A stretch of DNA of 64,000 nt, taken from positions 8,370,001 through 8,434,000 of the forward strand of contig OZ281496.1 in NCBI GenBank assembly GCA_965637545.1, written 5' to 3'. Shown here piece after piece: positions 1-14,784 of this stretch (positions are counted from its first letter, which is position 1; each line of letters begins with the position of its first letter). This stretch comes from Phallusia mammillata. Its lineage: Eukaryota. The notes below the pieces were generated by a model, which saw only the letters and a list, made by a program, of their open reading frames with translations, was not told where the DNA came from and did no database searches. The position numbers and the translations under genes were made by a program.

Positions 1-1978
1 ATAACAAGAAAATCCGTAAGTCAACCGTGGCATATAGGATCAAATGGGAGGCTTTGGAAGACAAAGAAGTAAGAAAGAAGTTTGCATCGAGCATGTCATC
101 AAAGTTCAGACAACTTCCAGATGTATCTGAGGACATTGAGATGGAATGGGAATCATTCAAAACAGCCATAATTTCTTCTGCTGCGGAAAGTTGCGGGCGA
201 AAACGACTCAGAGTAACGAAGAACAAAAAGAAAACACCTTGGTGGAATGAGGATGTGAAACAAGTGATTAGTGCAAAGAAGGAGGCTTATAGGGCTTTGT
301 TGCAACACAGGTCTTCATCTGAATTACAATCGCGTTACTCGGAAGCGCGGAGAGCTGCCACTTTAGCAGTTAAAAAGTCCAAAGAGAAATCTTGGGAGGA
401 GTTTGGTCGACAGTTGGATTCCAACTACACATCGGCAAATAAAGTATTTTGGCAGACCATACGCCGTTTGCGTGGTAAGAGATCAAATGCCACAAGCTAC
501 ATCAAAGACACAAATGGAAACATCCTTCGTGAAGAAAGGGATATACTTGCACGATGGAGAGAATACTTTAAAGACCTTTTGAACCCAGTAAAGGCAACGC
601 CAATTGATACACAGCAAATAGTCCAACCAGGAGAAGAGGAAGTCTTCACAGCAGTCGAAGTTGCAATAGCAGTACGAGGGCTAAAATCCGGAAAGGCAGC
701 TGGTGAAGATGAAATCCGACCTGAAATGTTGAAAGCTCTTGGACGGGAAGGAATTCTGTGGTTAACACAAGTGTGTCAAGTGGCGTGGAAACTTGGCAAG
801 ACACCTAAAGACTGGCAAACGGGCGTAGTTATTCCCATTTTTAAAAAAGGCGATCGTAAGGAATGCACGAACTACAGAGGAATATCGTTGCTTAGTTTGC
901 CAGGAAAGGTGTATGCCAAATGCCTTGAACGAAAATGCCGAGAAATAGTGGAAACAAAACTGGAGGAGGGCCAGTGTGGTTTTCGTCCTGGTCGCAGCAC
1001 TACGGACCAAATCTTCACATTGAAGCAAGTCTTCGAGAAATCATGGGAATATGCCAAAGACGTATTCGCATGTTTCGTCGACCTTGAGAAGGCATTTGAT
1101 CGGATTCCTCGAGAAAAGCTTTGGGGAGTACTACAGGAACATGGCATCAATGGCCAGCTGTTGCTGGCCATAAAATCATTTTACAATCAGCCCGAGGTTT
1201 GTGTTCGCGTGAACGGCAAACAAACTAAACCATTCCATGTGGGGGTTGGTCTTCGGCAAGGATGTGTATTGTCACCACTCCTTTTCGTTATCTACATGAA
1301 CTGGATTGACAAGTGCAGCCTAACTGATGATTGTGTCACGATTGGAAGCTTTAAAATTAGTCGTTTGCTTTTTGCAGTGATGGGAGACAAGACACCGAAA
1401 TTGATTTTAGAACTGGAAAAGCAAGCTCTGTGATAAGGGCATTGCAGCTTTCGGTTGTCATGAAACGAGAATTGTCAAAGAAGGCAAAGATGGCGATATT
1501 TAAAACCATCTTCATTCCCATACTCACTTATGGTCATGAGGCGTGGATCATGACCGAGAAGGTGCGATCACAACTACAAGCATCTGAAATGAGGTTTTTG
1601 CGTAGGGTTGAACGGGTTACTTTACTTGACAAAGTACGTAGCTCCGAAATCCGCAAATCTCTAAGCGTCGATCCTCTACTTCTCAAAATCGAACGATCCC
1701 AGCTGAAATGGTTTGGCCATGTTAACAGAATGCCTCAGAAAAGGCTTCCCAAACAATCTCTGTTTGCAAAACCAAAAGGGAAGCGGCCCACTGGACGACC
1801 TCGAACTCGATGGTTAGATCAAGTTAAAAGCCTGGCCTGGAATCCCTTGGGAATTTATCCGGATGAACTGAAGGAAGTGGTGACTGACCGTGAAGTGTGG
1901 AGGCTCAATCTTGAGCTGCTGCCCCCGCGACCCTCAAAAGGATTAAGCGGGAAAGAAAAATGATGAATGATGATGATT
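1..1978 (+). mobile_element. RTE-clade non-LTR retrotransposon (LINE), 3' part; runs off the left edge of the window
   Basis: ORF 27-1433 carries RT motifs (KAAGED, DWQTGVVIPIFKKGD, NYRGISLL, QCGFRPGRSTTDQIF, FVDLEKAFD, GLRQGCVLSPLLF). ORF 1430-1963 matches the typical RTE C-terminus (KRELSKKAK...LTYGHEAW...SEMRFLRR...LKWFGHV...GRPRTRW). It ends in a short (TGA)n tail at about 1961-1978. Confidence 0.93.
27..1963 (+). pseudogene. Reverse transcriptase ORF of the RTE element, inactivated by an internal deletion with frameshift
   Basis: At about 1375 the RT reads ...SRLLFA and then jumps, in another frame, to SDGRQDTEIDFRTGKASSVIRAL. The catalytic DD of FADD and the following RT segment are missing. 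Confidence 0.85.
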
Positions 1979-2088: not shown

Positions 2089-5000
2089 TTAACAGCAGGA
2101 CACATTGCGTAGACGCTCCCAGTTCTTCCATAAGCACGAAACTGAACAAAACCGGTCGGTAGAGGTTTTACACTTGGTGGCAACATCGAGTTAACCACTG
2201 AATCGTTTCCGATTGAAAATTGAACTGGTACCGAAAGCACGTCATCATCATACAAGCAATCTGGACCTGAAACAACAAGCTTTTTCAAATTGTTGTAAAG
2301 CATAAGTTCTCAGTTACATCAAATTATTTACTCACAAAAGTCAGTTTCTGTAATGATTTCCAATATTTTGTACGTTGCAGCTTTAATCTCAGTTTCGGTT
2401 ATTAAAACTCCATTTCTCCTACCAATTAAAATCGATTTTAGAAAAGTATTTTATTACAATGTTTGTTAGTACAATGCCAAACCCTTCCTATTACCTTGAA
2501 ATCATTGTGTAACCAAAAACTATATTTGATACAGCATTTTTAATTGACCATTCGAAAAAATAACTATTGCCGACGGGGTTGTATAAACTGATAATAGGCG
2601 TTCCAGATGATTTCCAAAGCTAAAAAGAAAAAAGTTAGAAATAAAAAAAATACTAAGTTTTTATTAAGTTATATCTTTTATTTATATAGGCAATCTTATA
2701 ATATTTGTTTAGAAGAAAATAATGCAGGAAATATTTTCGTCTATGCTATCAAATTCAGAATTTGCAAATGTGTGTAAACTGCAGTGTAACTCAAGTAACA
2801 ATTACCAAAAACAATTTTTAGTTTTTTATTGATTATCAGAAATTAATCGACAATCTTTTGGCTTTAAAATAAATTTGAAGGTACGTATTAAAAACAATTC
2901 CAGTCACAACTGTATTATATTACCTGCGTAAACTCCGTGACTTGAAACTATCTACTGATATTAGGTAAAACAAAGGTAAAACGTACCTCTGGATTATTGA
3001 CATAAAACCAAACATCACACAAGCTGGCATATGACGTTCCATTTCTACATTGTGATTGAAAATGCAAAAAGAAATCGTTGATAGTGTGGTTTCCCTCGTA
3101 GAGAACTACTGAATCAGTTACTGGTCTTTGACTGTATAACTAAAACGAACAAAGTTTAAATGGATAATTGAAAAATGTCATAACGCAGTATAAACGTACT
3201 TCGAAATTCATGTAATCAAAACAGTGGTCAAAATTTCCGATACCAAACAAAGCAAAAAAGGGACGCATTTTTCGACTTGAACTCATTATGTTTCCAATGC
3301 CGCATCTTTTACAGTTGATTATTTAGTTAAATTTTAACAACAAAAAAATTGCAATTTAAACATACGTAGCATCCAAATCATAATACACATAACGATTATA
3401 ATGATCAGAACAATCTATTTGATATTCGTATGGATAATTGCAACGATGTCTTGTGTAGAATCTGACCTGAACAAACACTTTTGTTATAATTTCCTTGATC
3501 ATATCAGAATGGCAATAGCATACCCTCATTCCGTAATTGTTTCCAAACAATTGACTATCATCCATCAAATAAGAATGAGAACCATAGTTGTAAAAATAGA
3601 AATCAGTAATTAAACTCGTGATTTCTGTGGATTTTTTCTCAAGTCGATTCAACATTGAATTCACATCAGGATAAAAAACTTTAAGCAAACATAAAACTTG
3701 CTTTAGTTTAGAGCGAATTAATTTACCAAATTTGGGAAGATTCCCTGCATACGTTTTTTAGAGTTCAACCGCAGGCTAATATACACTTACTGTTAAAATA
3801 CAGAAATTCATACATAATTATTTAGCAATTGGGACTTTCAACATTTATACTTTAGTGCACTTTAAAGGCAATCAGTAATGCTGAGAGGTACATAATCTTA
3901 TATTTGCAAAAGCTACATTTAAGGGTATTTCTTACCATTCTTGGAACTTATTTGATATCGAGAATTAAACATTTTTTGCATATTTCCTCCATAAAATTGC
4001 ATAAATCCGTTCTCTGTTTGATATTGCAAAAAACTTTGCTCTCTGCTGATCTCTAGTGGTGTTTGGTTTAAAACATGACGTAACATAACATCTTTTCCCT
4101 GAAATTGATTTCTCCATTGTAAAAAATGGGTTAAGTCACTTTTTATCAATATTTGCCTGATATTCAAAATAAGCTTGACTTTTAAAATCTGATCGTGTAC
4201 AAGTAGAAAATGTTCCAAATGCGTTTGTGTTCATCCAATTTTGGTAATCTGGAATTCAAGAAGCACGTAAAATGTTTTCTTGCATTAGTACAATATAACT
4301 TACCTATAATATTATCGTTGTTGTTTGACGATGTAACAAACCACAAATCACTATAACTTTCTTCTAAACTTAAATCATTGTCGTTGATAGTTGCAGCGAG
4401 AATCCATCCACCACCAGCAGCAACCATGTCACAGTAAACCTGTAAACAAAACTCGTTCGTAAGAGTACATTTGTTATTCTAAAAGTTGCAATGATGTCAT
4501 TGATGGATTGTCAGAAAAAAAAGACAGACCATCTTTTTTTACATTAAAGGCAGAATTCTCGTTAAAGGCAAAATTGTAAACAACTCTCAGTACGCCAGGC
4601 CCAGTGAAGGCCTTTCACCGACTTAGCCGGTCACCAGATATTTTCCACATAGATTTTTCGGTATAACGCCAACAATAGGCCTGGCGTGCTGTCATTTATA
4701 TATGTGTGTGCCGTGATTGCTGGTGTGCATGAACGCTTCCGGGCTGGTCTGCAATCAAGTAAACATCGTCATAAAATATAATTCCACACCTCAAACGATT
4801 TGAGTGACGGTTGTATGACGTAAATTCCATCTTTGAAGCCTGTGTCTCTCAGTTGAATACATGAACGAGCAGGATTTGGGAAAGTACCGAGCGGTGATTT
4901 TGTTGTCTCAGATTCTGTTGTGTTCAGAGTTGTTTGTCCTGTTGTCGGCGGTGCTGAGCAATACAGAAATTAGATTAAATATATCCTTTATTCATGCAAA

Positions 5001-6293
5001 ACTACGACAACTTTGTCTAAGTGGCTCCTTCAGCAAATTTTTTATTCAGTTGTGTTTACAGTTGTTTGTCCAGTTGCCTGTGGTGCTGAGCAATAGAAAC
5101 ACTATTTTTAATGAAACTTTTAGTTCTACAACACTGCACTAACTTTATTTAAGTTTTCAACCTCCCGTAATTATACTTGGAAAGTCTTTTATTCTTACAT
5201 TTGTGTCAAAAAGAAACATATAAGACTTACATTTAGATTAAAATGTTTGATAACAGCTGACTGCATAATGACTGGTTAATATTTTTTGGATATGTTTAAA
5301 CCCAAACATTTATTTTCAGTCAAGCTTAAAGTTAAAAACGTTTACAAAAATCAGTCTGAAGTACTCGTCAGAAACTCGATTATGGTTTATGACTTACTGT
5401 GATCAGTTGCTTCGTCTAAGTTCTGAAACAATAAAACGTGCAGTTTGCAGTCAAACGCAACAAGTGTAACAAGTTAACTGCACCTGTTTTCCTGTGAAAT
5501 TGAGTATCCCGAAAACTAGACCCAAAGCAGCCAGAATACCAACTGCGCACACCAAGACTACAATCCAGTTTGATGTGTTTGGTTTTGCAAAAAAAATTCT
5601 TGGACATTTTTTACCTGACTGCGTGTCGACAGTTTCTGTATAAAATAGAAGTCATTGTTTCTCTAAACGTAGCCTCTCCACCACAAAAAAACAGGAACTT
5701 TGTTGCATTAAAACCTATTGAAATAGGATTAGACTTAAAAATAAACTGTTTGAAATAAATTAACTGAGTTTGCAGGAGAAAACTGTTTTTTTTTGCGCTA
5801 CAGTGGTCATAAATGATGCAACAACCGTAGTTTAAACACAGTTTAAAGATTTGTTTGGTAGCACTCAACACAGATTTAAATGTACTGCGAGTTTTTTTTT
5901 TTATCAAGCATTTACAAAACAACTTACCAGAACTGTGTACAGTTTTAGGTGTTGGTGTTGTTTTAATGGATTCTTCATATACGTCTGTGGAAGATTCCAC
6001 GTACACATTTGAGAAGGGCCCCTGTCGTTCTGGTTTGAAGGGGAAAAGTCACAGTAAATATTCGAGAGTAAGTATTTGTGGTTTGTGTTATGTTTCGACA
6101 AACATTTTAAATATGTTACACAGCATTTTGGACAGATGTAAACAAAAAAATTGAAGAGATTTTTTGCAAAGTTAAAAATATCCTTTAAAATATTACCTCG
6201 TTTCTTTCTGTTTGCTGCAGGCTGGTAACGACCTTGTTTGATCTCAATAGTTTCGTAGTCACCAGCATCGTTGTTCACATAAGTATGAGCCAT
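2089..6293 (-). CDS. Type II transmembrane intelectin-like (fibrinogen-related) protein; spliced, with the 3' exons beyond the LINE and outside the window
   Basis: Phase-consistent exons in transcript order: 6293-6197, 6029-5928, 5635-5484, 5422-5398, 4953-4790, 4439-4304, 4248-4157, 4098-3936, 3678-3524, 3139-2987, 2619-2495, 2418-2336, 2266-2089; GT-AG introns except one GC-AG. The product contains the TM helix WIVVLVCAVGILAALGLVFGILNF and a Thr-rich stalk. It then reads NPARSCIQLRDTGFKDGIYVIQPSLKSFEVYCDMVAAGGGWILAA, NWMNTNAFGT...SDFKSQAYFEYQGKDVMLRHV...FLQYQTENGFM and VPVQFSIGND...TGFVQFRAY...AMCPAVK, which align by eye with the intelectin consensus (FCDM..GGGW; NWANYNTFG..SDDYKNPGYYDIQAKDL; AGFVQFRVF..ALC). 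Confidence 0.85.
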
Positions 6294-8260: not shown

Positions 8261-9300
8261 GCTTGGAAATTCTTCGTTAAAAGTTACCTATTTTAAATAA
8301 AAACACAAAACTAATAACTTTTTGGTTTATGGTAGTTTGTTTTATATTTCATATATTTTCATGTAACTTTATTTCATATAAGAATAATAAACTCGCCACA
8401 CAAAGTAACAATACAGATAAAATTTCACAGCCCTTTTCTTTTTTGTTTCTGTTTTGAAAAGTTTTGGTTTAGACAAAGTTTTAGGCTAAAAATGGTTTTT
8501 ATAGTATTTTGCATTTTCAAACGTGATGATTACGGTAAATCACCCTTAAGCAAAACACGGTCAAATTTAGCCTTAAAGTGGTAGCAGCTAACTACATTGT
8601 GACTGCCCGATTCCCTGCTTTCAAAACGACAGAAGATTCACATGTTAACAACATTTTTTGTGTCTTTTGCTTTCTTGCACTAACAATTAGCAGTTATGCA
8701 TCATTTGGCACAGTACATTTTTTAAAATAGCCACCGTTGATAACAAGTGTTGTGATGACTTAAAATTTAAGTTGCTGAAAACATAATTGTAGGAACTCAG
8801 TTGCACTAAAACAATAACCAAGCCGGAAATAGCTGCTCAAACCTGAAACGCTATAGTGGAAGGCGCAATTGGTGGACAATGTCTAAACGCGCTACAGCTG
8901 CTTCGTATTACAAATCGTTAAGCGAGGAAAACTTGAAACACAATAAGTTTGGCGCACTGTAAGCAAAACTACAACTGTTGGAAACGTTGATTTGACCACT
9001 CAAGAGGGCTCAAAGCCGTTAAAGTAATCTTTCCCGTAATTAAATCTGTTTTATCACAACTAAGTTTGTGAATTGCTGTGTAAAATGTAGCTCATATTCA
9101 TAGAAAACAACACTTAACCAGCATCAGTTTTGATAATATTGGAGAATTAAAGTTTCACTTATAAAACGTACTTTATGTAATTGTTGAGTAATTGTATTAC
9201 ATACGGAAAGCAATGTGTGCTTTACCCAAGGAATTTACCAACGACAAATGTTAGAATGCAAACACATAACAATCTTGAGTATATGGGGAAAAACTTATAT

Positions 9301-12300
9301 CTACAGACGAATTTGTTTAGCTGTTGGGTTCAGGGAAATTTTGCTCCATACAAGGTAACCAGCTACCATCACTACAGCAGCTAGAAGAACAAACATCCCA
9401 AGTTGGAAGATGTTGTGAGCTGCTTCATTGGCTTCATCTCTATCTCCTGCAGTGTCTGCAATAAAAAAACGTTTAACTTAGATCTACACATATGAACGAG
9501 AACATATTTATTACATAAAATCTGCACTCAATTGAACTTTTAGGTTGGTCAACTTTAAACAATACTGTATATATAAATATCATCGTACGTCAGACCTGGA
9601 ACTGAACTTATATCTAATTAAGAACCTTAAAAAGGCATCTACATACAATATGAGTTAAACTAAACTTATAAAGGGGCAAGCATTTATTAAGTTTACAACT
9701 TTTTGCTTTCAAAGATTTTGCCAGAGACTTTGGTTGCGTATTCAAAAAGCCAATATTCGCTTATCGAAATAGGTATTGGAAATAGGAGATTAGAATAAGG
9801 TTGCAAGTTAAGTATAAATGATATTTCATTTGTTGTGCTGTTACCTTGCACATGCAAATACTTGGTAGTTTGTAGGATGTGCACTGGTCCTGTAGAAAGT
9901 CGTTGGTTGCGTCCATTGTTGTCAACAGATCGTCGACCTACACCTCCACATGTCTGCGAATAAATTAATACACTCAATTAATACACATAAATTAATATTG
10001 CATTAGGGATTTACCATTAAGTGTTTTAGTTTAAAAACTTGAAACAAATTTAGACACACCGAATCTGTCTAACTCTAAAAGATAATAGTGACAAAAAACT
10101 CTTAGGTAAACTTTTAACTTGGTTAACAGCATTTTCTAGTGTTTCATGTTTCGGAGAGAAATATTATCAACCCAACTCACCTGTCCAGGGCATTGTCCAG
10201 TTGAGTTTTGACAGACGGTCACGTCGCAGTGGATGTAGATAAATTGTTCTGCGTCGGTAAAGTTTGTCCACACAAAGCTCATCACCTTAAATGTTGCAAA
10301 GATGGATTCGTAATTTCGCATCAACATTTTTGCGTCGGCTGCCTCGCTTCCACTGGGTGGCGCATCGCATCTAATATTTTGACACGAGTTACGCACAGTC
10401 AAATAGGGAACGAAAATATAAGAAATAAGTATACAAGTAAAGCTTACCCGCTTTGTACAACAGGGTAGTTCGGCAAACCACTGGAGGTTTCAACGCGTGT
10501 GGCCCAACATTCTTCAAGCTGTGCACAAAAGTTGTAATTACAATCTATTCTGCGTAAATGGATAATTGGCGAGATCAAAACCAAATTACGAAGCCCGTTT
10601 TATAAACATCAGGTGAGGCACAACTTTGACATTTTCAAAAATGTTCTGGAAGCTCTAATCGATAATTCTTTGTTCCACAAGAAACTTTTTGTATTCAACG
10701 CACCCGAACAATATAGTCATCGCTGCTTGGAGAAATTTCATTTAGTCTGACTTCAGCAAAAATGTAGTTAGGTACAGTGACTTCTCCGGGCAAGCTTTCG
10801 TTGAAATGTTCGTTGGCAAAGAGATTGAGAGCGATATCAAAGTTTCCTGTATTCTGAGCTGAAATTTCAGCGGATCTACAAATAGGTTACATGTCTCAGA
10901 AATTGGTACTTTAGGCTTCAAGGTATCTTGATTTGAAATTTCAAGTTTCTATGGGTAAAAAGTAATGCACATTTTTCTGAGGATTTTGTCAAATTAACTG
11001 TAATTTCGAATTATTGTCTTTACCGTTTATTTTTTCCATGTTTTTTGACTAGCACTAAAAATCAAACTAAATTTCCTCAACAATTTCCTGCAAAAGCAAC
11101 GCTTGTGTGTGGCATGTTTTTTTCGCATTAAATGACGTTTGTCATTTTTATATTTCGCATATTGTTATTGTTGACTGTGGCATGTGACATGGGCTCCCGC
11201 ATCGAATGACATGTGCCATGTTTATATTTCTGATGTGGTCTGCTTTTTGCTTTGGTTTCTCACCCTGCTTGTGGTTGGACGTGGGATGACGAGAGAAATA
11301 GGTCTGCTTCAAATAGACAAGTCACATTGAGCTTGTTTTGAACGTCACGTTGGATCACGGCAGAGGATGGAGCTAGGTATCTCCAGATCAGGAAAGACGC
11401 CGATACATTGCCGTTCTCATTCTGTCACATATACAAATTTAGAAGCTGATCAAAATGTACAACAGCCAATCGCAACTTTATAGAATACAGACATTAAAGA
11501 GCTGAATACAATGTACACTTTCAATGCACACTTACTTTGATTTTGCTTTTGTAATGTATTTTAACAACTGATATTTTTCGTGTCACCTTGTAGAAGGCTT
11601 CGCATTGGCCAATGTCAAACACGAACACTGGATCTGATCCCGTGACCTTGCAGCTGTCATTGAGTTGAGAAGGGGGAGTTTCCCGGTTCAATGCGATGTA
11701 AAGTGTGTCACCGAGTTCGTAATCTAATGTCATCTGTTCATCAGCTGTGACTCTGCAATGATCAGGTTTTTGCTATTTACAGATCAATTTAATTCAACAT
11801 GTCTTCAAGGAATACATAGTAAAACCTTTTTTAGAACCACTATAAGAGAGAAAACAATGACTAAGCATGACGTGACACTACTATTACATCAAATGTGTAC
11901 AATATTGTAAGATGTATACATCGCTATTCTATCTTGAACATTATGTAGCCACGGTGTAGCTGCAGTGCGTTTAGCGCTCATCCGTCGATTGTGCCCTGCG
12001 CTGTTTTGCGCTCTATGACGTTTTAACGCTGCGCAGCTATTTCCGGCTTATTGATTGTTTTAATCCAGTGGTTCCCAAACTTTTTCATATTTTTTATCAA
12101 AACGGTCCCTTTGCCATTATTTCGACGGCTCGCGGTCCTTAAGCCTAAACGTGTATTTCATAAAAACGAAAGTTGATTGCAGGGTTTTAGCTAGTTATGC
12201 AAAATTGCGCATAACAATCATCCAAATACAGCATATGACATCACAAACAAGACAAAAAACATTACGATTGTGCGCGAACAATTGCATTTTTGATAGTTGT

Positions 12301-14784
12301 CATTCAATAAAGGCCATTGTTTAGCAATGGAGACAGTCGATTCTCAATTCTACTTTGATTTAAACTTATTTAGTGGCACAAACTGAGGCCAAATAAGATT
12401 ATAGAATTACTTCAACCGCTTGGCGGTCCCCCTAAAATTGCCTCACGGACCCCTAAAGGACCGCGGACCCCAGTTTGGGAACCGCTGTTTTAATCCAATT
12501 GGGTCGCTATGCATTCTTTCATCCAGTAAAACAAACTAAACTCGACCATTTCACGGCAGTTACTAAATTTGACGCGACAATTTTCGATACAGTGAACGTT
12601 GGTTCAGTTGCAATCGAAACATTTTCTTTGTTTCATGCCGCAAAATGTATTTTTTGCCCTGCAATTGGCCTCATAGTAACGTTGTTTTAACGGGGAAAGT
12701 ATAAATTAGCACTTGTTGGTAACAACGTGTATCCCTTCGTTCATATAGCTTGAGGTAGTTTGTTTTCGTTTTGAAAGTGTTCAATATATTATTACTCTAT
12801 TGTTAGGAGCTAACTACACAACAAACTCACCTTATGGTCAAATCTTTTTCGCTGCATTTCACTGCTTGCTGCATGTCTAAAAAAATCCACAATAATCAAT
12901 AATCATTCTCTAACTTACAACAAGCAGTTAAACCAAAACAATTAAAATTTAGCTGATTGTTTTCCGTTCCGACCAGTTTGGCTGCATTTGGTTACTTTAA
13001 CCTTGCAACACAGCCTCTTTAAGTGAGTGGTTTTCAACCTGTGGGACGTAACCCATTGGGGGCGTTAGCCATTTTAACTGGGAGTCGTGAAGGCCGATAA
13101 ATGGTATCAAACATTAGTATTCATAAAATCCAACCGTTTGATTTACACTTGCCATGTAGTGAACTATGACTATAAAAAACAAATGCCTTATCACGTTGCT
13201 ATTACGAAGAAATGTTAATGCAAGTGACCCCGGCGCGTGTAAGTGTCGGACATGCGTTTTGGGTCGGGTTCGGTTTCAGCATTATACTTTTGGGTTCGGG
13301 CCGGGTTCAAACTCGAATTTGTGCTCACTGACCCACACACAGATGGCAAACTTGATCTCAGAAGCGGCATGAGATCAAAACCCGCGATAAAAAGAAAAAA
13401 ATTCACTCACCTTGTAGATTTTACTGTCGCATTAAATTTAAAACAAACAGTTTTTTACATACTTTCTTCTAGGACCACAGTTGCATTAAACCCCATTCCG
13501 CCAACATTTCTGTCACTGAGAAACATAACAGTGAGACTTGTTGCGTTAACTCGGTGTTCAAATTCTTGAAGTAATCCACTAAGTACCTCCATACGATTAT
13601 TGTCGATCTTGAACTGAATAAAAAGTTGTAAATTATCAATTAATGTAAAACTATCAGAAAGCTTGGTCGGTTTTCTGTCCGAATGGGCTACATTTCGTTA
13701 TCAAGTTGCAGTGTAATTTTAATAACAGTAGTTTAGATGATGTCTTTCGAGTTTTAGGTCAACTAGATTTGGGTTAGATTTCACAATGTTTTGGCGGTTT
13801 CCAAGCACTAATTGGCGACCCCACACCCAATGAATAGAGTGTCAAAAACAATGACTTTTTTATTTAAAAGCAATAGGTAAAGGAACCGCTCTCATTATTT
13901 GAACTGGAACGTAATAATTGACTTACCAATAACATGTCATAAGTGGATTCAAGGTCAAAGGCTGAGAATTGAAACAACAAGGACTTTCTGGTATCGAGTT
14001 GAAAATTCCATGTGCACACATGATAAGGAGGGTAGTCGCTTGGAAAGTTTGGAGACATGAAATTAAACACTGGTCCAGTTACTTCTTCCCCACACAAATT
14101 TGCTGAAATGTAACAGAACGAACGCAATGAAAGCTGCTTGATTCGGACCTGACTTTTCGCTCGTTTCGCAACTTTAAGGTAAATCTATATATTTTCTTAC
14201 CTTGAAGAATTCTGAAATTCACCCTTTCTGTTGTATAGTTTGTTACACATTGAATGAAGGCTCTAGGGCCGGTCAAGACCACGGGAAAAGACGGGCCTCC
14301 TCCCTGCAAAATCCCCACGAAATTGCCTGTGTTGTCAGTTCCCTCGTAAACCTAGATAATGAAAAAGAGATTTCGGTTTCAGATTGGATTTATATATGAT
14401 TCTCGGAGTCTCGGGGTCTCGTGGAGCCGCTTGGCATCGGGTTGTCGGAGTCTCGGGGTCTCCGAAGTAATAGTAAAGTGTTATAAAACGATAGTTGAAA
14501 GTAAACATGTTGTGGCGATATGAAGTCACTCAAACCCAGCATTGTAAACTAAAATAAGATTCTTATCAACCCCAGTAAGTGCGAACGTAGGCGATTGTGC
14601 AGTTTTGAAGGGAAATTTACCTTACAGAAGTTATCTGCTGCCAGCTCGGCTGCTCGTGTATAGGCGACCATTTTGGCGGAACCAAGAGTTGAAGTAAATC
14701 GAAGGTTGAAACCGTCACATGATGGTTCAATGTAGTCCACATACTCATGGTATGTCGACGTTACATTGCACTGAGCATCAGAAA
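9301..14784 (-). CDS. CUB + zona pellucida (ZP) domain single-pass membrane protein, CUZD1-like architecture, paralog A; first (signal peptide) exon not firmly placed
   Basis: Exons 14784-14621, 14351-14201, 14102-13927, 13613-13463, 12876-12831, 11752-11587, 11421-11264, 10875-10704, 10518-10448, 10370-10181, 9953-9845, 9455-9301, all GT-AG and in phase. CUB: CGEEVTGPVFNFMSPNFPSDYPPYHVCTW...GMGFNAT. ZP-N: AVKCSEKDL...NKLNVTCLF. ZP-C: LEECWAT...FATFKVMSF...IYIHCDVTVC. Dibasic GRRS at the usual ZP cleavage position, then TM LGMFVLLAAVVMVAGYLVW and stop at 9301. Confidence 0.87.
12066..12487. mobile_element. hAT-type MITE in an intron of CUB-ZP paralog A
   Basis: TIRs CAGTGGTTCCCAAAC / GTTTGGGAACCGCTG with a perfect 8-bp TSD TTTTAATC on both sides. 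Confidence 0.9.

What the first reader, a model, noticed from the sequence alone, without database searches (positions are those of the whole stretch)
5398..6293. Intelectin-like protein built as a type II membrane receptor with a tyrosine-rich cytoplasmic tail
Joining the first four exons gives an 89-aa N-terminus with no signal peptide, a hydrophobic helix (W90-L111) preceded by basic residues, a Thr-rich stalk and then the intelectin domain. The tail has five tyrosines: Y5 (YVN, Grb2-type YxN), Y13 (DYETI, YxxI in acidic context), Y23, Y42 (NVYVES) and Y50 (DVYEESI). Characterised chordate intelectins are secreted, soluble glycan-binding lectins (some GPI-associated). This topology instead resembles signalling lectin receptors such as Dectin-1-type C-type lectins and the type II fibrinogen-domain receptor FIBCD1. 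It may be an undescribed microbial-glycan signalling receptor; the signalling role is inference from motifs.
Basis: partly seen in the sequence, partly recalled or inferred. Interest (0 to 1): 0.88.

Follow-up and report, generated by a model that had tools for sequence, protein, structure and literature searches.

The report
Membrane-anchored intelectin-like receptor gene
A sea-squirt gene encodes an intelectin-type sugar-binding domain pinned to the cell membrane by an inner tail with two conserved tyrosines, unlike the secreted intelectins studied so far; no paper describing this was found.

Summary
On the minus strand, exons at 6293-6197, 6029-5928, 5635-5484 and 5422-5398 join in frame to a Thr-rich stalk and a divergent intelectin domain. 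Together, 15 exons give 600 codons without a stop. W90 and Tyr 5, 13, 23, 42 and 50 are as stated.

The only strong hydrophobic segment is about residues 88-111. Its flanking charges favour a type II (N-in) orientation, and I found no signal-peptide exon.

The genome is Phallusia mammillata or a close relative. Ciona, Clavelina and Styela have unnamed relatives with the same design and the same exon plan: helix exon phase 1 to 0, a micro-exon phase 0 to 1, then the lectin-start exon. Other family members instead carry a signal peptide and collagen stalk, so the N-terminus is a swappable cassette.

Tyr5 and the DYETIEIK motif (Tyr13) recur in a Ciona protein. Tyr23, 42 and 50 do not.

Signalling stays an inference. 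Glycan binding is uncertain, because the ligand site lies off the window and is only partly canonical in paralogues. No RNA covered the 5' exons.

This scan already noted the same family on other DNA of this genome. I found no paper on it.

The parts
6197..6293 (-). Exon 1: ATG, residues 1-32 of the cytoplasmic tail (Tyr5, Tyr13, Tyr23, basic run RKKR)
   Evidence: for the splice model; for the in-frame stop 5 codons upstream; good start context (aaacATGg) read directly.
6237..6281 (-). Codons 5-19: Tyr5 and the D-Y13-E-T-I-E-I-K motif, the part of the tail shared with Ciona P0142
   Evidence: DYETIEIKQGR against DYDTVEPKPSR scores 34, z 4.4, shuffle fraction 0.0028 for exon 1. Tyr is at position 5 in both proteins.
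5928..6029 (-). Exon 2: residues 33-66 of the tail (Tyr42 in NVYVES, Tyr50 in DVYEES). Its 102 nt are divisible by 3, so it could be skipped in frame
   Evidence: No counterpart in any fetched relative.
5484..5635 (-). Exon 3: juxtamembrane segment (KKCPR...), the helix and NFTGKQ; enters in phase 1 and leaves in phase 0
   Evidence: The same phases are found for the helix exon in Styela, Clavelina and Ciona.
5502..5567 (-). Codons W90-L111: predicted signal-anchor / transmembrane helix
   Evidence: Kyte-Doolittle peak 2.88, the only such segment in 600 residues; 4 K/R and 0 D/E before it, 1 K/R and 3 D/E after it.
5398..5422 (-). Exon 4: 25-nt micro-exon (NLDEATDH), phase 0 to 1
   Evidence: Counterparts of 31, 31 and 61 nt with the same phases occur in Styela, Clavelina and Ciona.
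4790..4953 (-). Exon 5: Thr/Pro-rich stalk and the start of the lectin domain (first conserved Cys)
4304..4439 (-). Exon 6: CDM...GGGW core of the fibrinogen-related/intelectin fold
   Evidence: ITLN1 (6usc, 4wmq) E about 1e-4, and XEEL.
4157..4248 (-). Exon 7, with a GC rather than GT donor
   Evidence: The intron position fits the family alignment.
3936..4098 (-). Exon 8: lectin domain up to the insertion point, ending in phase 1
2336..3678 (-). Six exons (3678-3524, 3466-3366, 3275-3200, 3139-2987, 2619-2495, 2418-2336) encoding a 231-aa module inserted in the lectin fold; the block enters and leaves in phase 1
   Evidence: for the model. It is collinear with Styela, Clavelina and Ciona proteins. 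A paralogue RNA contig joins the last two insert exons to exon 15. No Pfam or PDB sequence match.
2089..2266 (-). Exon 15: second half of the lectin domain; the last coding exon visible in the window
   Evidence: XEEL 175-229. RNA contigs with 0-3 mismatches end at 2089 and continue into an exon that is not in the window.
27..1963 (+). Non-LTR retrotransposon reverse-transcriptase ORFs on the opposite strand, inside the intron after exon 15. The gene's last roughly 67 codons lie beyond the window start
   Evidence: RVT_1 E 3.5e-25; paralogue fragments give the missing C-terminus, which ends MIFYR.

Best explanation
This is a real 15+-exon gene of Phallusia (P. mammillata or a very close relative). 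It encodes a single-pass type II membrane protein with four parts:
1. An 89-residue cytoplasmic tail.
2. A signal-anchor helix, W90-L111.
3. A Thr/Pro-rich stalk, probably O-glycosylated.
4. An extracellular, divergent intelectin domain split by a 231-residue inserted module.

It belongs to an ascidian-wide family in which one lectin body is fitted with one of two phase-compatible N-terminal cassettes. One cassette is a signal peptide plus collagen stalk, giving a secreted form. The other is a tail plus anchor helix plus micro-exon, giving a membrane form.

Likely mechanism:
- The ectodomain binds a ligand at the cell surface. Glycan is the default guess; the specificity is unknown.
- The conserved N-terminal tail motif then couples binding to the cell interior. 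That motif is Tyr5 in YVNN plus the acidic D-Y13-E-T-I-E-x-K, a YxxPhi / 'core-1' / hemITAM-like site.
- Coupling would run through phosphotyrosine docking (Src-family kinase, then an SH2 effector such as Syk or Grb2), through AP-2-type internalisation, or both.

Shown here: the gene model, the hydrophobic helix and its charge bias, the homology and exon plan of the membrane cassette, and conservation of Tyr5 and Tyr13 with Ciona.

Inferred: surface topology, ligand class, phosphorylation, and any downstream pathway.
For: Gene model:
- 15 exons and 600 codons with no stop.
- 5' exons GC 0.42 against 0.31 for their introns; chance open frame about 2e-4.

Topology:
- One helix only, with a positive-inside charge bias.
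- No alternative first exon with a signal-peptide core in the introns.
- No collagen-type or signal-peptide-type 5' exon anywhere in the window.

Family:
- Intelectin similarity.
- Organism, from paralogue fragments that are 95% identical in exon 15.
- Membrane-type relatives: Ciona P0142 and P0143, C. savignyi P0137, Clavelina P0134, Styela P0136 and P0222.
- The same cassette plan in four genera: helix exon 1>0, micro-exon of 25/31/31/61 nt 0>1, then the lectin-start exon in phase 1.
- The collagen-type control has a different plan but the same phase-1 entry.

Tail:
- Tyr5 plus DY[ED]T[IV]ExK shared with Ciona P0142 (z 4.4, p about 0.003).
- A Trp at the cytosolic edge of the helix is shared.

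Machinery. [quoted passage not shown] Botryllus receptor tails use hemITAM, YxxI/L/V and paired [A/D]VYxxV motifs (PMC12582321).
Against: - No RNA evidence for the 5' exons or their junctions. Exon 7 uses a GC donor. The 3' end is off the window, behind a retrotransposon.
- Topology rests on hydrophobicity and charge rules only; no dedicated predictor was available.
- The motif match with Ciona is short (11 residues) and was one of about ten comparisons.
- Three of the five tyrosines are not conserved. Membrane-type tails in Ciona P0143 and Clavelina are only about 20-25 residues long and have few or no tyrosines, so a tyrosine signal is not a family-wide requirement.
- D-A-G-D-Y-E-T-I does not meet the strict hemITAM pattern [DE][DE][DE]xYxxL.
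- The ligand site is only partly canonical in the closest paralogues, and one canonical Cys is lost here. The Phallusia clade sits on a very long branch, so lectin activity may have changed.
Confidence: 0.6

Rival explanations
1. The protein is membrane-anchored, but the tail only sorts it. It is a constitutively recycling endocytic or scavenger receptor that uses YETI as a YxxPhi AP-2 signal, like FIBCD1 or the asialoglycoprotein receptor. There is no phosphotyrosine signalling.
For: YETI fits YxxPhi and lies near the N-terminus of a type II tail. Known type II lectin receptors use such signals; this rests on my knowledge of ASGPR, the transferrin receptor and FIBCD1. The strict hemITAM pattern is not met. 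Short-tailed relatives lack multiple tyrosines.
Against: The acidic context and the conserved E-x-K after the motif, plus a second conserved Tyr in a YxN context, are more than a bare YxxPhi needs. The Styela tails carry YENV, a Grb2-type site. Ascidians have the phosphotyrosine machinery. The two roles do not exclude each other.
Confidence: 0.3
2. The anchor is only a tether or a precursor form. The tyrosines are incidental, and the working molecule is a surface-displayed or proteolytically shed lectin.
For: Three of the five tyrosines are not conserved, and tails differ greatly between genera. Sister genes of the family are secreted collagen-stalk forms, so the lectin body works outside the cell.
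Against: Tyr5 and the Tyr13 motif are kept between Phallusia and Ciona although the rest of the tail has diverged beyond alignment. That is not expected for a mere spacer.
Confidence: 0.2
3. This particular copy is a silent or decaying member of a large family and makes no protein.
For: No RNA contig covered exons 1-8 in four runs. There is a GC donor at exon 7, a retrotransposon in the last visible intron and a lost canonical Cys. Earlier scan notes report decayed copies in other arrays (unchecked).
Against: 600 codons in 15 exons are open, with intact splice signals. RNA contigs with 0-1 mismatch over exon 15 are spliced exactly at 2089 to a downstream exon. The runs were small contig sets, so silence is not shown.
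Confidence: 0.12
4. The 5' exons are wrongly joined: they belong to another transcript, or the helix is a cleaved signal after a long leader.
For: The junctions were not seen in RNA. A V-F-G site inside the helix could in principle suit signal peptidase; this was read from the sequence and not scored.
Against: The upstream same-strand gene (CUB + ZP domains) ends about 3 kb away. The phase chain needs the 25-nt micro-exon to reach exon 5. The same cassette plan is annotated in three other genera. The hydrophobic core is about 22 residues long and starts at residue 90, unlike a signal peptide.
Confidence: 0.06

Closest known systems
Human intelectin-1 and Xenopus XEEL (X-type lectins; PDB 4WMQ, 6USC, 4WMO)
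   Same: Fibrinogen-related start with the CDM...GGGW core; matches to XEEL 45-82 and 175-229; paralogues end in ...FYR.
   Different: Those are secreted with a signal peptide. This protein has a tail and an anchor helix, a 231-aa insert inside the fold, one canonical Cys lost, and the ligand-site Asn and His replaced in the closest paralogues.
Unnamed ascidian membrane-type intelectin-like proteins: Ciona intestinalis F6XRZ3 'Intelectin-1b-like' (P0142) and LOC100177669 (P0143); C. savignyi H2YWG1 (P0137); Clavelina LOC143468938 (P0134); Styela LOC120333426 and LOC120333434 (P0136, P0222)
   Same: N-tail, one helix, then the lectin domain; identical exon plan of the N-terminal cassette; the insert module is present in most; Tyr5 and the DY[ED]T[IV]ExK motif are shared with P0142.
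   Different: Tail lengths range from 20 to 89 residues. This gene has an extra tail exon carrying the NVYVES/DVYEES pair. P0142 lacks the insert. By lectin-domain tree, the Styela pair groups with Styela collagen-type genes.
Secreted collagen-stalk split intelectins of ascidians (Styela P0040 and P0132, Clavelina P0033, Ciona P0129)
   Same: Collinear lectin plus insert at about 30% identity over residues 148-600; same phase-1 entry into the lectin-start exon.
   Different: They have a signal peptide, a Cys-rich segment and Gly-X-Y repeats in place of the tail and helix.
FIBCD1 (vertebrate type II fibrinogen-domain receptor)
   Same: Works alike in outline: an N-terminal cytoplasmic tail, a signal anchor and a C-terminal fibrinogen-related recognition domain. 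It is an endocytic pattern receptor (my knowledge).
   Different: A different branch of the fibrinogen-related superfamily. FIBCD1 has a coiled-coil and a polycationic stalk; here the stalk is Thr/Pro-rich. No orthology is implied.
Dectin-1 / CLEC-2 hemITAM C-type lectin receptors
   Same: Type II lectin receptors with a single acidic YxxL/I motif within about 15 residues of the N-terminus (my knowledge; CLEC-2 motif described in PMC3576117, seen).
   Different: Unrelated lectin fold. The motif here is D-A-G-D-Y-E-T-I, which is not [DE][DE][DE]xYxxL. Syk dependence is untested.
Amphioxus intelectin-like proteins with an N-terminal helix and collagen repeats (P0013-P0016, P0019)
   Same: Intelectin domain behind a short basic tail and an internal hydrophobic helix.
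   Different: Canonical intelectin clade, no insert, collagen repeats present, no tyrosines in the tail. Probably an independent solution.

Membership tests
Intelectin (X-type lectin) family | Fibrinogen-related N-terminal subdomain with conserved Cys and the CDM...GGGW core | tested here: met
   ITLN1 E 1.4e-4 for one 45-aa exon; BLASTP about 1e-33 to annotated intelectins; C157 and C183 kept.
Intelectin (X-type lectin) family | Intelectin-specific second half of the domain | tested here: met
   exon 15 aligns to XEEL 175-229; paralogues continue to ...CIGG...W...MIFYR.
Intelectin (X-type lectin) family | Ligand-binding calcium site (Asn260, Glu262, Glu274, His263, Trp288, Tyr297 of human ITLN1; residue list from my knowledge of Wesener et al. 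2015) | tested here: inconclusive
   This region lies outside the window. In the closest paralogue P0003, N-T-E-H-H reads R-G-E-F-V: the Glu and the downstream Trp are kept, the Asn and His are replaced.
Intelectin (X-type lectin) family | Cleavable N-terminal signal peptide and a secreted protein | tested here: not met
   The first 85 residues are hydrophilic and the helix starts at residue 90. No signal-peptide exon was found.
Ascidian membrane-type split intelectins (unnamed) | Tail plus a single internal helix ahead of the lectin domain | tested here: met
Ascidian membrane-type split intelectins (unnamed) | Cassette exon plan: helix exon phase 1>0, micro-exon 0>1, lectin-start exon entered in phase 1 | tested here: met
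   this gene; Styela; Clavelina; Ciona; the collagen-type control differs.
Ascidian membrane-type split intelectins (unnamed) | About 230-aa module inserted in the lectin fold, entering and leaving in phase 1 | tested here: met
hemITAM lectin receptors (Dectin-1 / CLEC-2 type) | Type II topology with an N-terminal cytoplasmic tail | tested here: met
   By hydrophobicity and charge rules only; no experiment.
hemITAM lectin receptors (Dectin-1 / CLEC-2 type) | Motif [DE][DE][DE]xYxxL | tested here: not met
   The tail reads N-D-A-G-D-Y-E-T-I: two acidic residues, and Ile at +3. The pattern is as quoted in PMC12582321.
hemITAM lectin receptors (Dectin-1 / CLEC-2 type) | C-type lectin domain | tested here: not met
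   The ectodomain is intelectin-like.
hemITAM lectin receptors (Dectin-1 / CLEC-2 type) | Syk recruitment to the phosphorylated tyrosine | not testable with these tools
   Needs biochemistry. Syk-family kinases are reported in ascidians.
FIBCD1-type receptors | Coiled-coil and polycationic stalk that make tetramers | not tested
   The stalk here is Thr/Pro-rich (read from the model). No coiled-coil analysis was run.

The most novel reading that the evidence does not exclude
Ascidians carry an old, exchangeable 'tail + anchor + micro-exon' cassette that turns secreted collagen-stalk intelectins into type II receptors. Its conserved Tyr5/DYETI motif would be a working phosphotyrosine switch. [quoted passage not shown]
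Probability: 0.3. Interest if true: 0.8.

Novelty: new variant of a known kind. Interest (0 to 1): 0.62.

Why it matters
Every intelectin studied so far is a soluble lectin, and how intelectins pass information to cells is an open question. A membrane-anchored form with a conserved tyrosine motif, found in several ascidian orders next to secreted sister genes, offers a directly testable link between X-type lectin recognition and cell signalling or uptake. It is also a clear case of domain-cassette swapping that decides whether an immune lectin is secreted or cell-bound. Ciona is transfectable, so the Ciona relatives give an experimental route.

Tried and rejected
- RNA check. No listed run is on record as RNA and holds the gene. 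Contigs of four probable RNA runs touched only exon 15 and small parts of other lectin exons, mostly as diverged paralogues. None reached the 5' exons, so the splice chain stays unconfirmed.
- Searches failed because of a frame slip of mine and were corrected.
- The next 3' exon, taken from loose ends of RNA contigs, is not in the window.
- The search for homologous proteins with P0004 alone returned only itself. A profile headed by a tandem canonical intelectin was swamped by canonical intelectins. A profile built on full-length split intelectins worked.
- The look-up of encoding contigs had no record for P0004, P0136 or P0142.
- Tails of Styela, Clavelina and Ciona P0143 against this tail gave no similarity above shuffles. 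I therefore dropped the idea that the NVYVES/DVYEES pair is homologous to the Styela DLYENV/VTYEQP pair.
- The 5' end of Ciona gene 1 in L001, which has TYET before its helix, could not be modelled cleanly. It is reported only as an aside.
- I first labelled P0142 'canonical'. It is membrane-type, so the AU test was redone.
- Look-ups in the scan's notes by sequence were blank.
- I could not fold or run family searches on the spliced protein itself, because it has no reference. Those steps were left out. All work on the joined model was done in scripts.
- I left the stretches written N alone and met no human-like contig.
Full report
OBSERVATION

The finding lies on the minus strand. A script-built splice model gives these exons: E1 6293-6197, E2 6029-5928, E3 5635-5484, E4 5422-5398, E5 4953-4790, E6 4439-4304, E7 4248-4157, E8 4098-3936, six further exons between 3678 and 2336, and E15 2266-2089. 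All acceptors are AG. All donors are GT except E7, which is GC. The phases chain without a break into 600 codons with no stop.

An in-frame stop lies five codons before the ATG, and E1-E4 contain no other Met. The 5' exons have GC 0.42 against 0.31 for their introns. At the intronic stop density, 126 open codons have a chance probability of about 2e-4. The 25-nt micro-exon E4 is exactly what is needed to bring the helix exon (which ends in phase 0) into the stalk exon (which is entered in phase 1).

TOPOLOGY SIGNALS

In 600 residues only one segment passes a Kyte-Doolittle 19-residue threshold: residues 86-116, peak 2.88. The 15 residues before the helix carry 4 K/R and no acidic residue. The 15 after carry 1 K/R and 3 acidic residues. 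By the positive-inside rule this is an N-in, type II signal anchor.

I looked for a hidden secreted form in two ways:
- No ATG-started exon in introns 2-4 with the right phase has a hydrophobic core; the best 10-residue score is 1.07.
- No collagen-type or signal-peptide-type 5' exon like those of relatives exists anywhere in the 64 kb.

The upstream gene on the same strand is a separate CUB + ZP-domain gene that ends about 3 kb away. No dedicated topology predictor was available, so the topology remains a computed inference.

WHAT THE PROTEIN IS

- E6 alone matches human intelectin-1 (6USC, 4WMQ, E about 1e-4) and Xenopus XEEL.
- E15 aligns to XEEL 175-229.
- The joined model reaches about 1e-33 against annotated intelectins by BLASTP.
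- An exhaustive search with E15 found two fragments that are 95% identical over that exon and one at 48%. All three are from Phallusia mammillata. The window is therefore from that ascidian or a very close relative.
- The fragments supply the missing C-terminus of about 67 residues, ending MIFYR. In the window it lies beyond a reverse-transcriptase element that sits in the last visible intron.
- Between E8 and E15, six exons encode a 231-residue module inside the lectin fold. The block enters and leaves in phase 1. It has no Pfam or PDB sequence match, but it is collinear with long ascidian proteins.

RNA

No listed run is on record as RNA and holds the stretch. Contigs of four probable RNA runs covered exon 15 and small parts of other lectin exons, mostly with 5-10% mismatches, which marks them as paralogues. 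Nothing covered 5398-6293.

The useful parts were these:
- Contigs with 0-3 mismatches stop exactly at 2089 and continue into an exon reading K-V-N-D-W-R-S-E-F, so that donor is used.
- One paralogue contig joins the last two insert exons to exon 15.

The 5' splice chain is thus unconfirmed by RNA.

RELATIVES

A family profile built from full-length split intelectins plus my exons recovered two kinds of ascidian protein. All are annotated only as 'uncharacterized protein LOC...' or generically.

Kind 1 has a signal peptide, a Cys-rich piece and Gly-X-Y collagen repeats:
- Styela P0040 and P0132
- Clavelina P0033 and P0231
- Ciona P0129 and P0138

Kind 2 has a tail and one strong internal helix:
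- Styela P0136 and P0222: 72-residue tail with DYRY, DLYENV, VTYEQP
- Clavelina P0134: about 25 residues
- Ciona P0143: about 20 residues
- C. savignyi P0137
- Ciona P0142 (UniProt F6XRZ3, 'Intelectin-1b-like'): 44-residue tail and no insert

Amphioxus has its own canonical-clade intelectin models with a short basic tail, an internal helix and collagen repeats.

IS THE MEMBRANE CASSETTE HOMOLOGOUS?

I mapped the N-terminal exons on fetched loci. In Styela (L002), Clavelina (L004) and Ciona (L001) the plan is the same as here:
- The tail exon or exons end in phase 1.
- The helix exon runs phase 1 to 0. It ends in Gln in Phallusia, Styela and Ciona.
- A micro-exon of 25, 31, 31 or 61 nt runs phase 0 to 1.
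- The lectin-start exon is entered in phase 1.

The collagen-type Clavelina gene (L005) has a different 5' plan, with exons ending in phases 0, 0 and 1, but the same phase-1 entry. So the two N-termini are phase-compatible cassettes on one lectin body.

The lectin-domain tree places this gene with the Phallusia fragments on a very long branch. It gives a Clavelina + Ciona membrane-type clade, and it puts the Styela membrane pair inside the Styela collagen-type clade.

The AU tests gave two results:
- All membrane-type rows held as one clade: rejected, p = 0.0004.
- The same test without the Styela pair: borderline, p = 0.048.

The groups were partly named after the tree had been seen, so these p-values are indicative only. 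The disagreement between cassette and lectin body fits cassette exchange between paralogues.

ARE THE TYROSINES CONSERVED?

Against the Styela, Clavelina and Ciona P0143 tails, this tail shows no similarity above shuffled controls.

Against Ciona P0142 it does:
- DYETIEIKQGR aligns with DYDTVEPKPSR. The score is 34, z = 4.4, and the shuffle fraction is 0.0028 for exon 1 (0.042 for the whole tail).
- Both proteins have Tyr at position 5.
- With about ten comparisons made, this stays near 0.03.

The Clavelina tail shares STEHLA with the later part of the P0142 tail (z = 4.9). A Trp at the cytosolic edge of the helix recurs in several relatives (FWK, LWK; here NW).

So Tyr5 and Tyr13 are conserved between two phlebobranch genera. 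Tyr23, Tyr42 and Tyr50 are not found elsewhere; exon 2 has no counterpart in any relative I could fetch.

HOW IT MAY WORK

DYETI is a YxxPhi sorting signal. It also fits the YxxI/L/V 'core-1' type described in Botryllus receptor tails. It resembles the strict hemITAM [DE][DE][DE]xYxxL but does not meet it. The NVYVES/DVYEES pair recalls the paired [A/D]VYxxV 'core-2' motif but does not match it either (PMC12582321). [quoted passage not shown]

I judge a cell-surface receptor whose conserved N-terminal tyrosine motif mediates signalling, internalisation or both to be the best reading (0.6 overall). Within that, phosphotyrosine signalling and pure endocytic sorting are about equally likely.

Ligand class is open. 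In the closest paralogues the canonical N-T-E-H-H ligand-site stretch reads R-G-E-F-V: the Glu and a downstream Trp are kept, the Asn and His are replaced. This gene has Glu in place of one canonical Cys.

NOVELTY

Four literature searches found no description of a membrane-anchored intelectin. A review of placozoan immunity cites 22 intelectins in tunicates (PMC6321704).

The proteins do exist in public annotations under generic names. Earlier notes of this scan report the same family on other DNA of this genome. I treated those notes as leads only. The cross-species cassette plan and the Ciona motif match were tested here.

I class the finding as a new variant of a known kind: an X-type lectin in a type II receptor format.

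Noticed in passing
window 2336-3678 (minus strand): The module inserted in the lectin fold is six exons and 231 residues in my model, not the four exons and 172 residues given in note s1-410952. It enters and leaves in phase 1, so skipping it keeps the frame. Ciona P0142 is a membrane-type relative without it. It has no Pfam or PDB sequence match.
   Followed up: partly
window 27-1963 (plus strand): Non-LTR retrotransposon reverse-transcriptase ORFs (RVT_1, E 3.5e-25), broken into two ORFs at about 1430. They lie antisense inside the intron after exon 15, and the window starts inside the element.
   Followed up: partly
window 5030-5100 (minus strand): Intron 4 holds a duplicate of the exon 5 acceptor and its first 45 nt or so (the ctattgctcag|cacc... 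stretch is nearly identical). It has no compatible donor or phase, so it looks like a dead pseudo-exon.
   Followed up: partly
window 4157 (minus strand): The exon 7 donor is GC rather than GT (CAG|GCAAAT). The intron position matches the family alignment.
   Followed up: no
window about 9300-14130 (minus strand): The upstream neighbour on the same strand encodes CUB (E 1.7e-10) and ZP-C (E 3.6e-6) domain pieces. It is a separate gene that ends about 3 kb before exon 1.
   Followed up: partly
P0013-P0016, P0019, P0021 (Branchiostoma): Amphioxus 'intelectin-1a-like / ITLN2' models carry a short basic tail, an internal hydrophobic helix and collagen repeats ahead of a canonical intelectin domain. 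This looks like a separate membrane-anchored design.
   Followed up: partly
L001 1730-1905 (Ciona intestinalis): A second tandem Ciona split-intelectin gene has ...DTYETNNYTSICKGFGDITWK before its helix, another YET-type motif with a juxtamembrane Cys. Its first exon could not be modelled in frame.
   Followed up: partly
L002 10001-34818 (Styela clava): The annotated Styela gene span contains two tandem copies of the membrane-type gene (5' exons at 10001 and at 27224, 85% identical). It is flanked by a C-type lectin/Ig gene and a CAP-domain gene.
   Followed up: no
window 2117-2232: Of the 12 differences listed between this exon 15 and paralogue RNA contigs, 9 fall on codon positions 1 or 2. 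This hints at fast protein divergence among paralogues. The numbers are small and come from several contigs.
   Followed up: no
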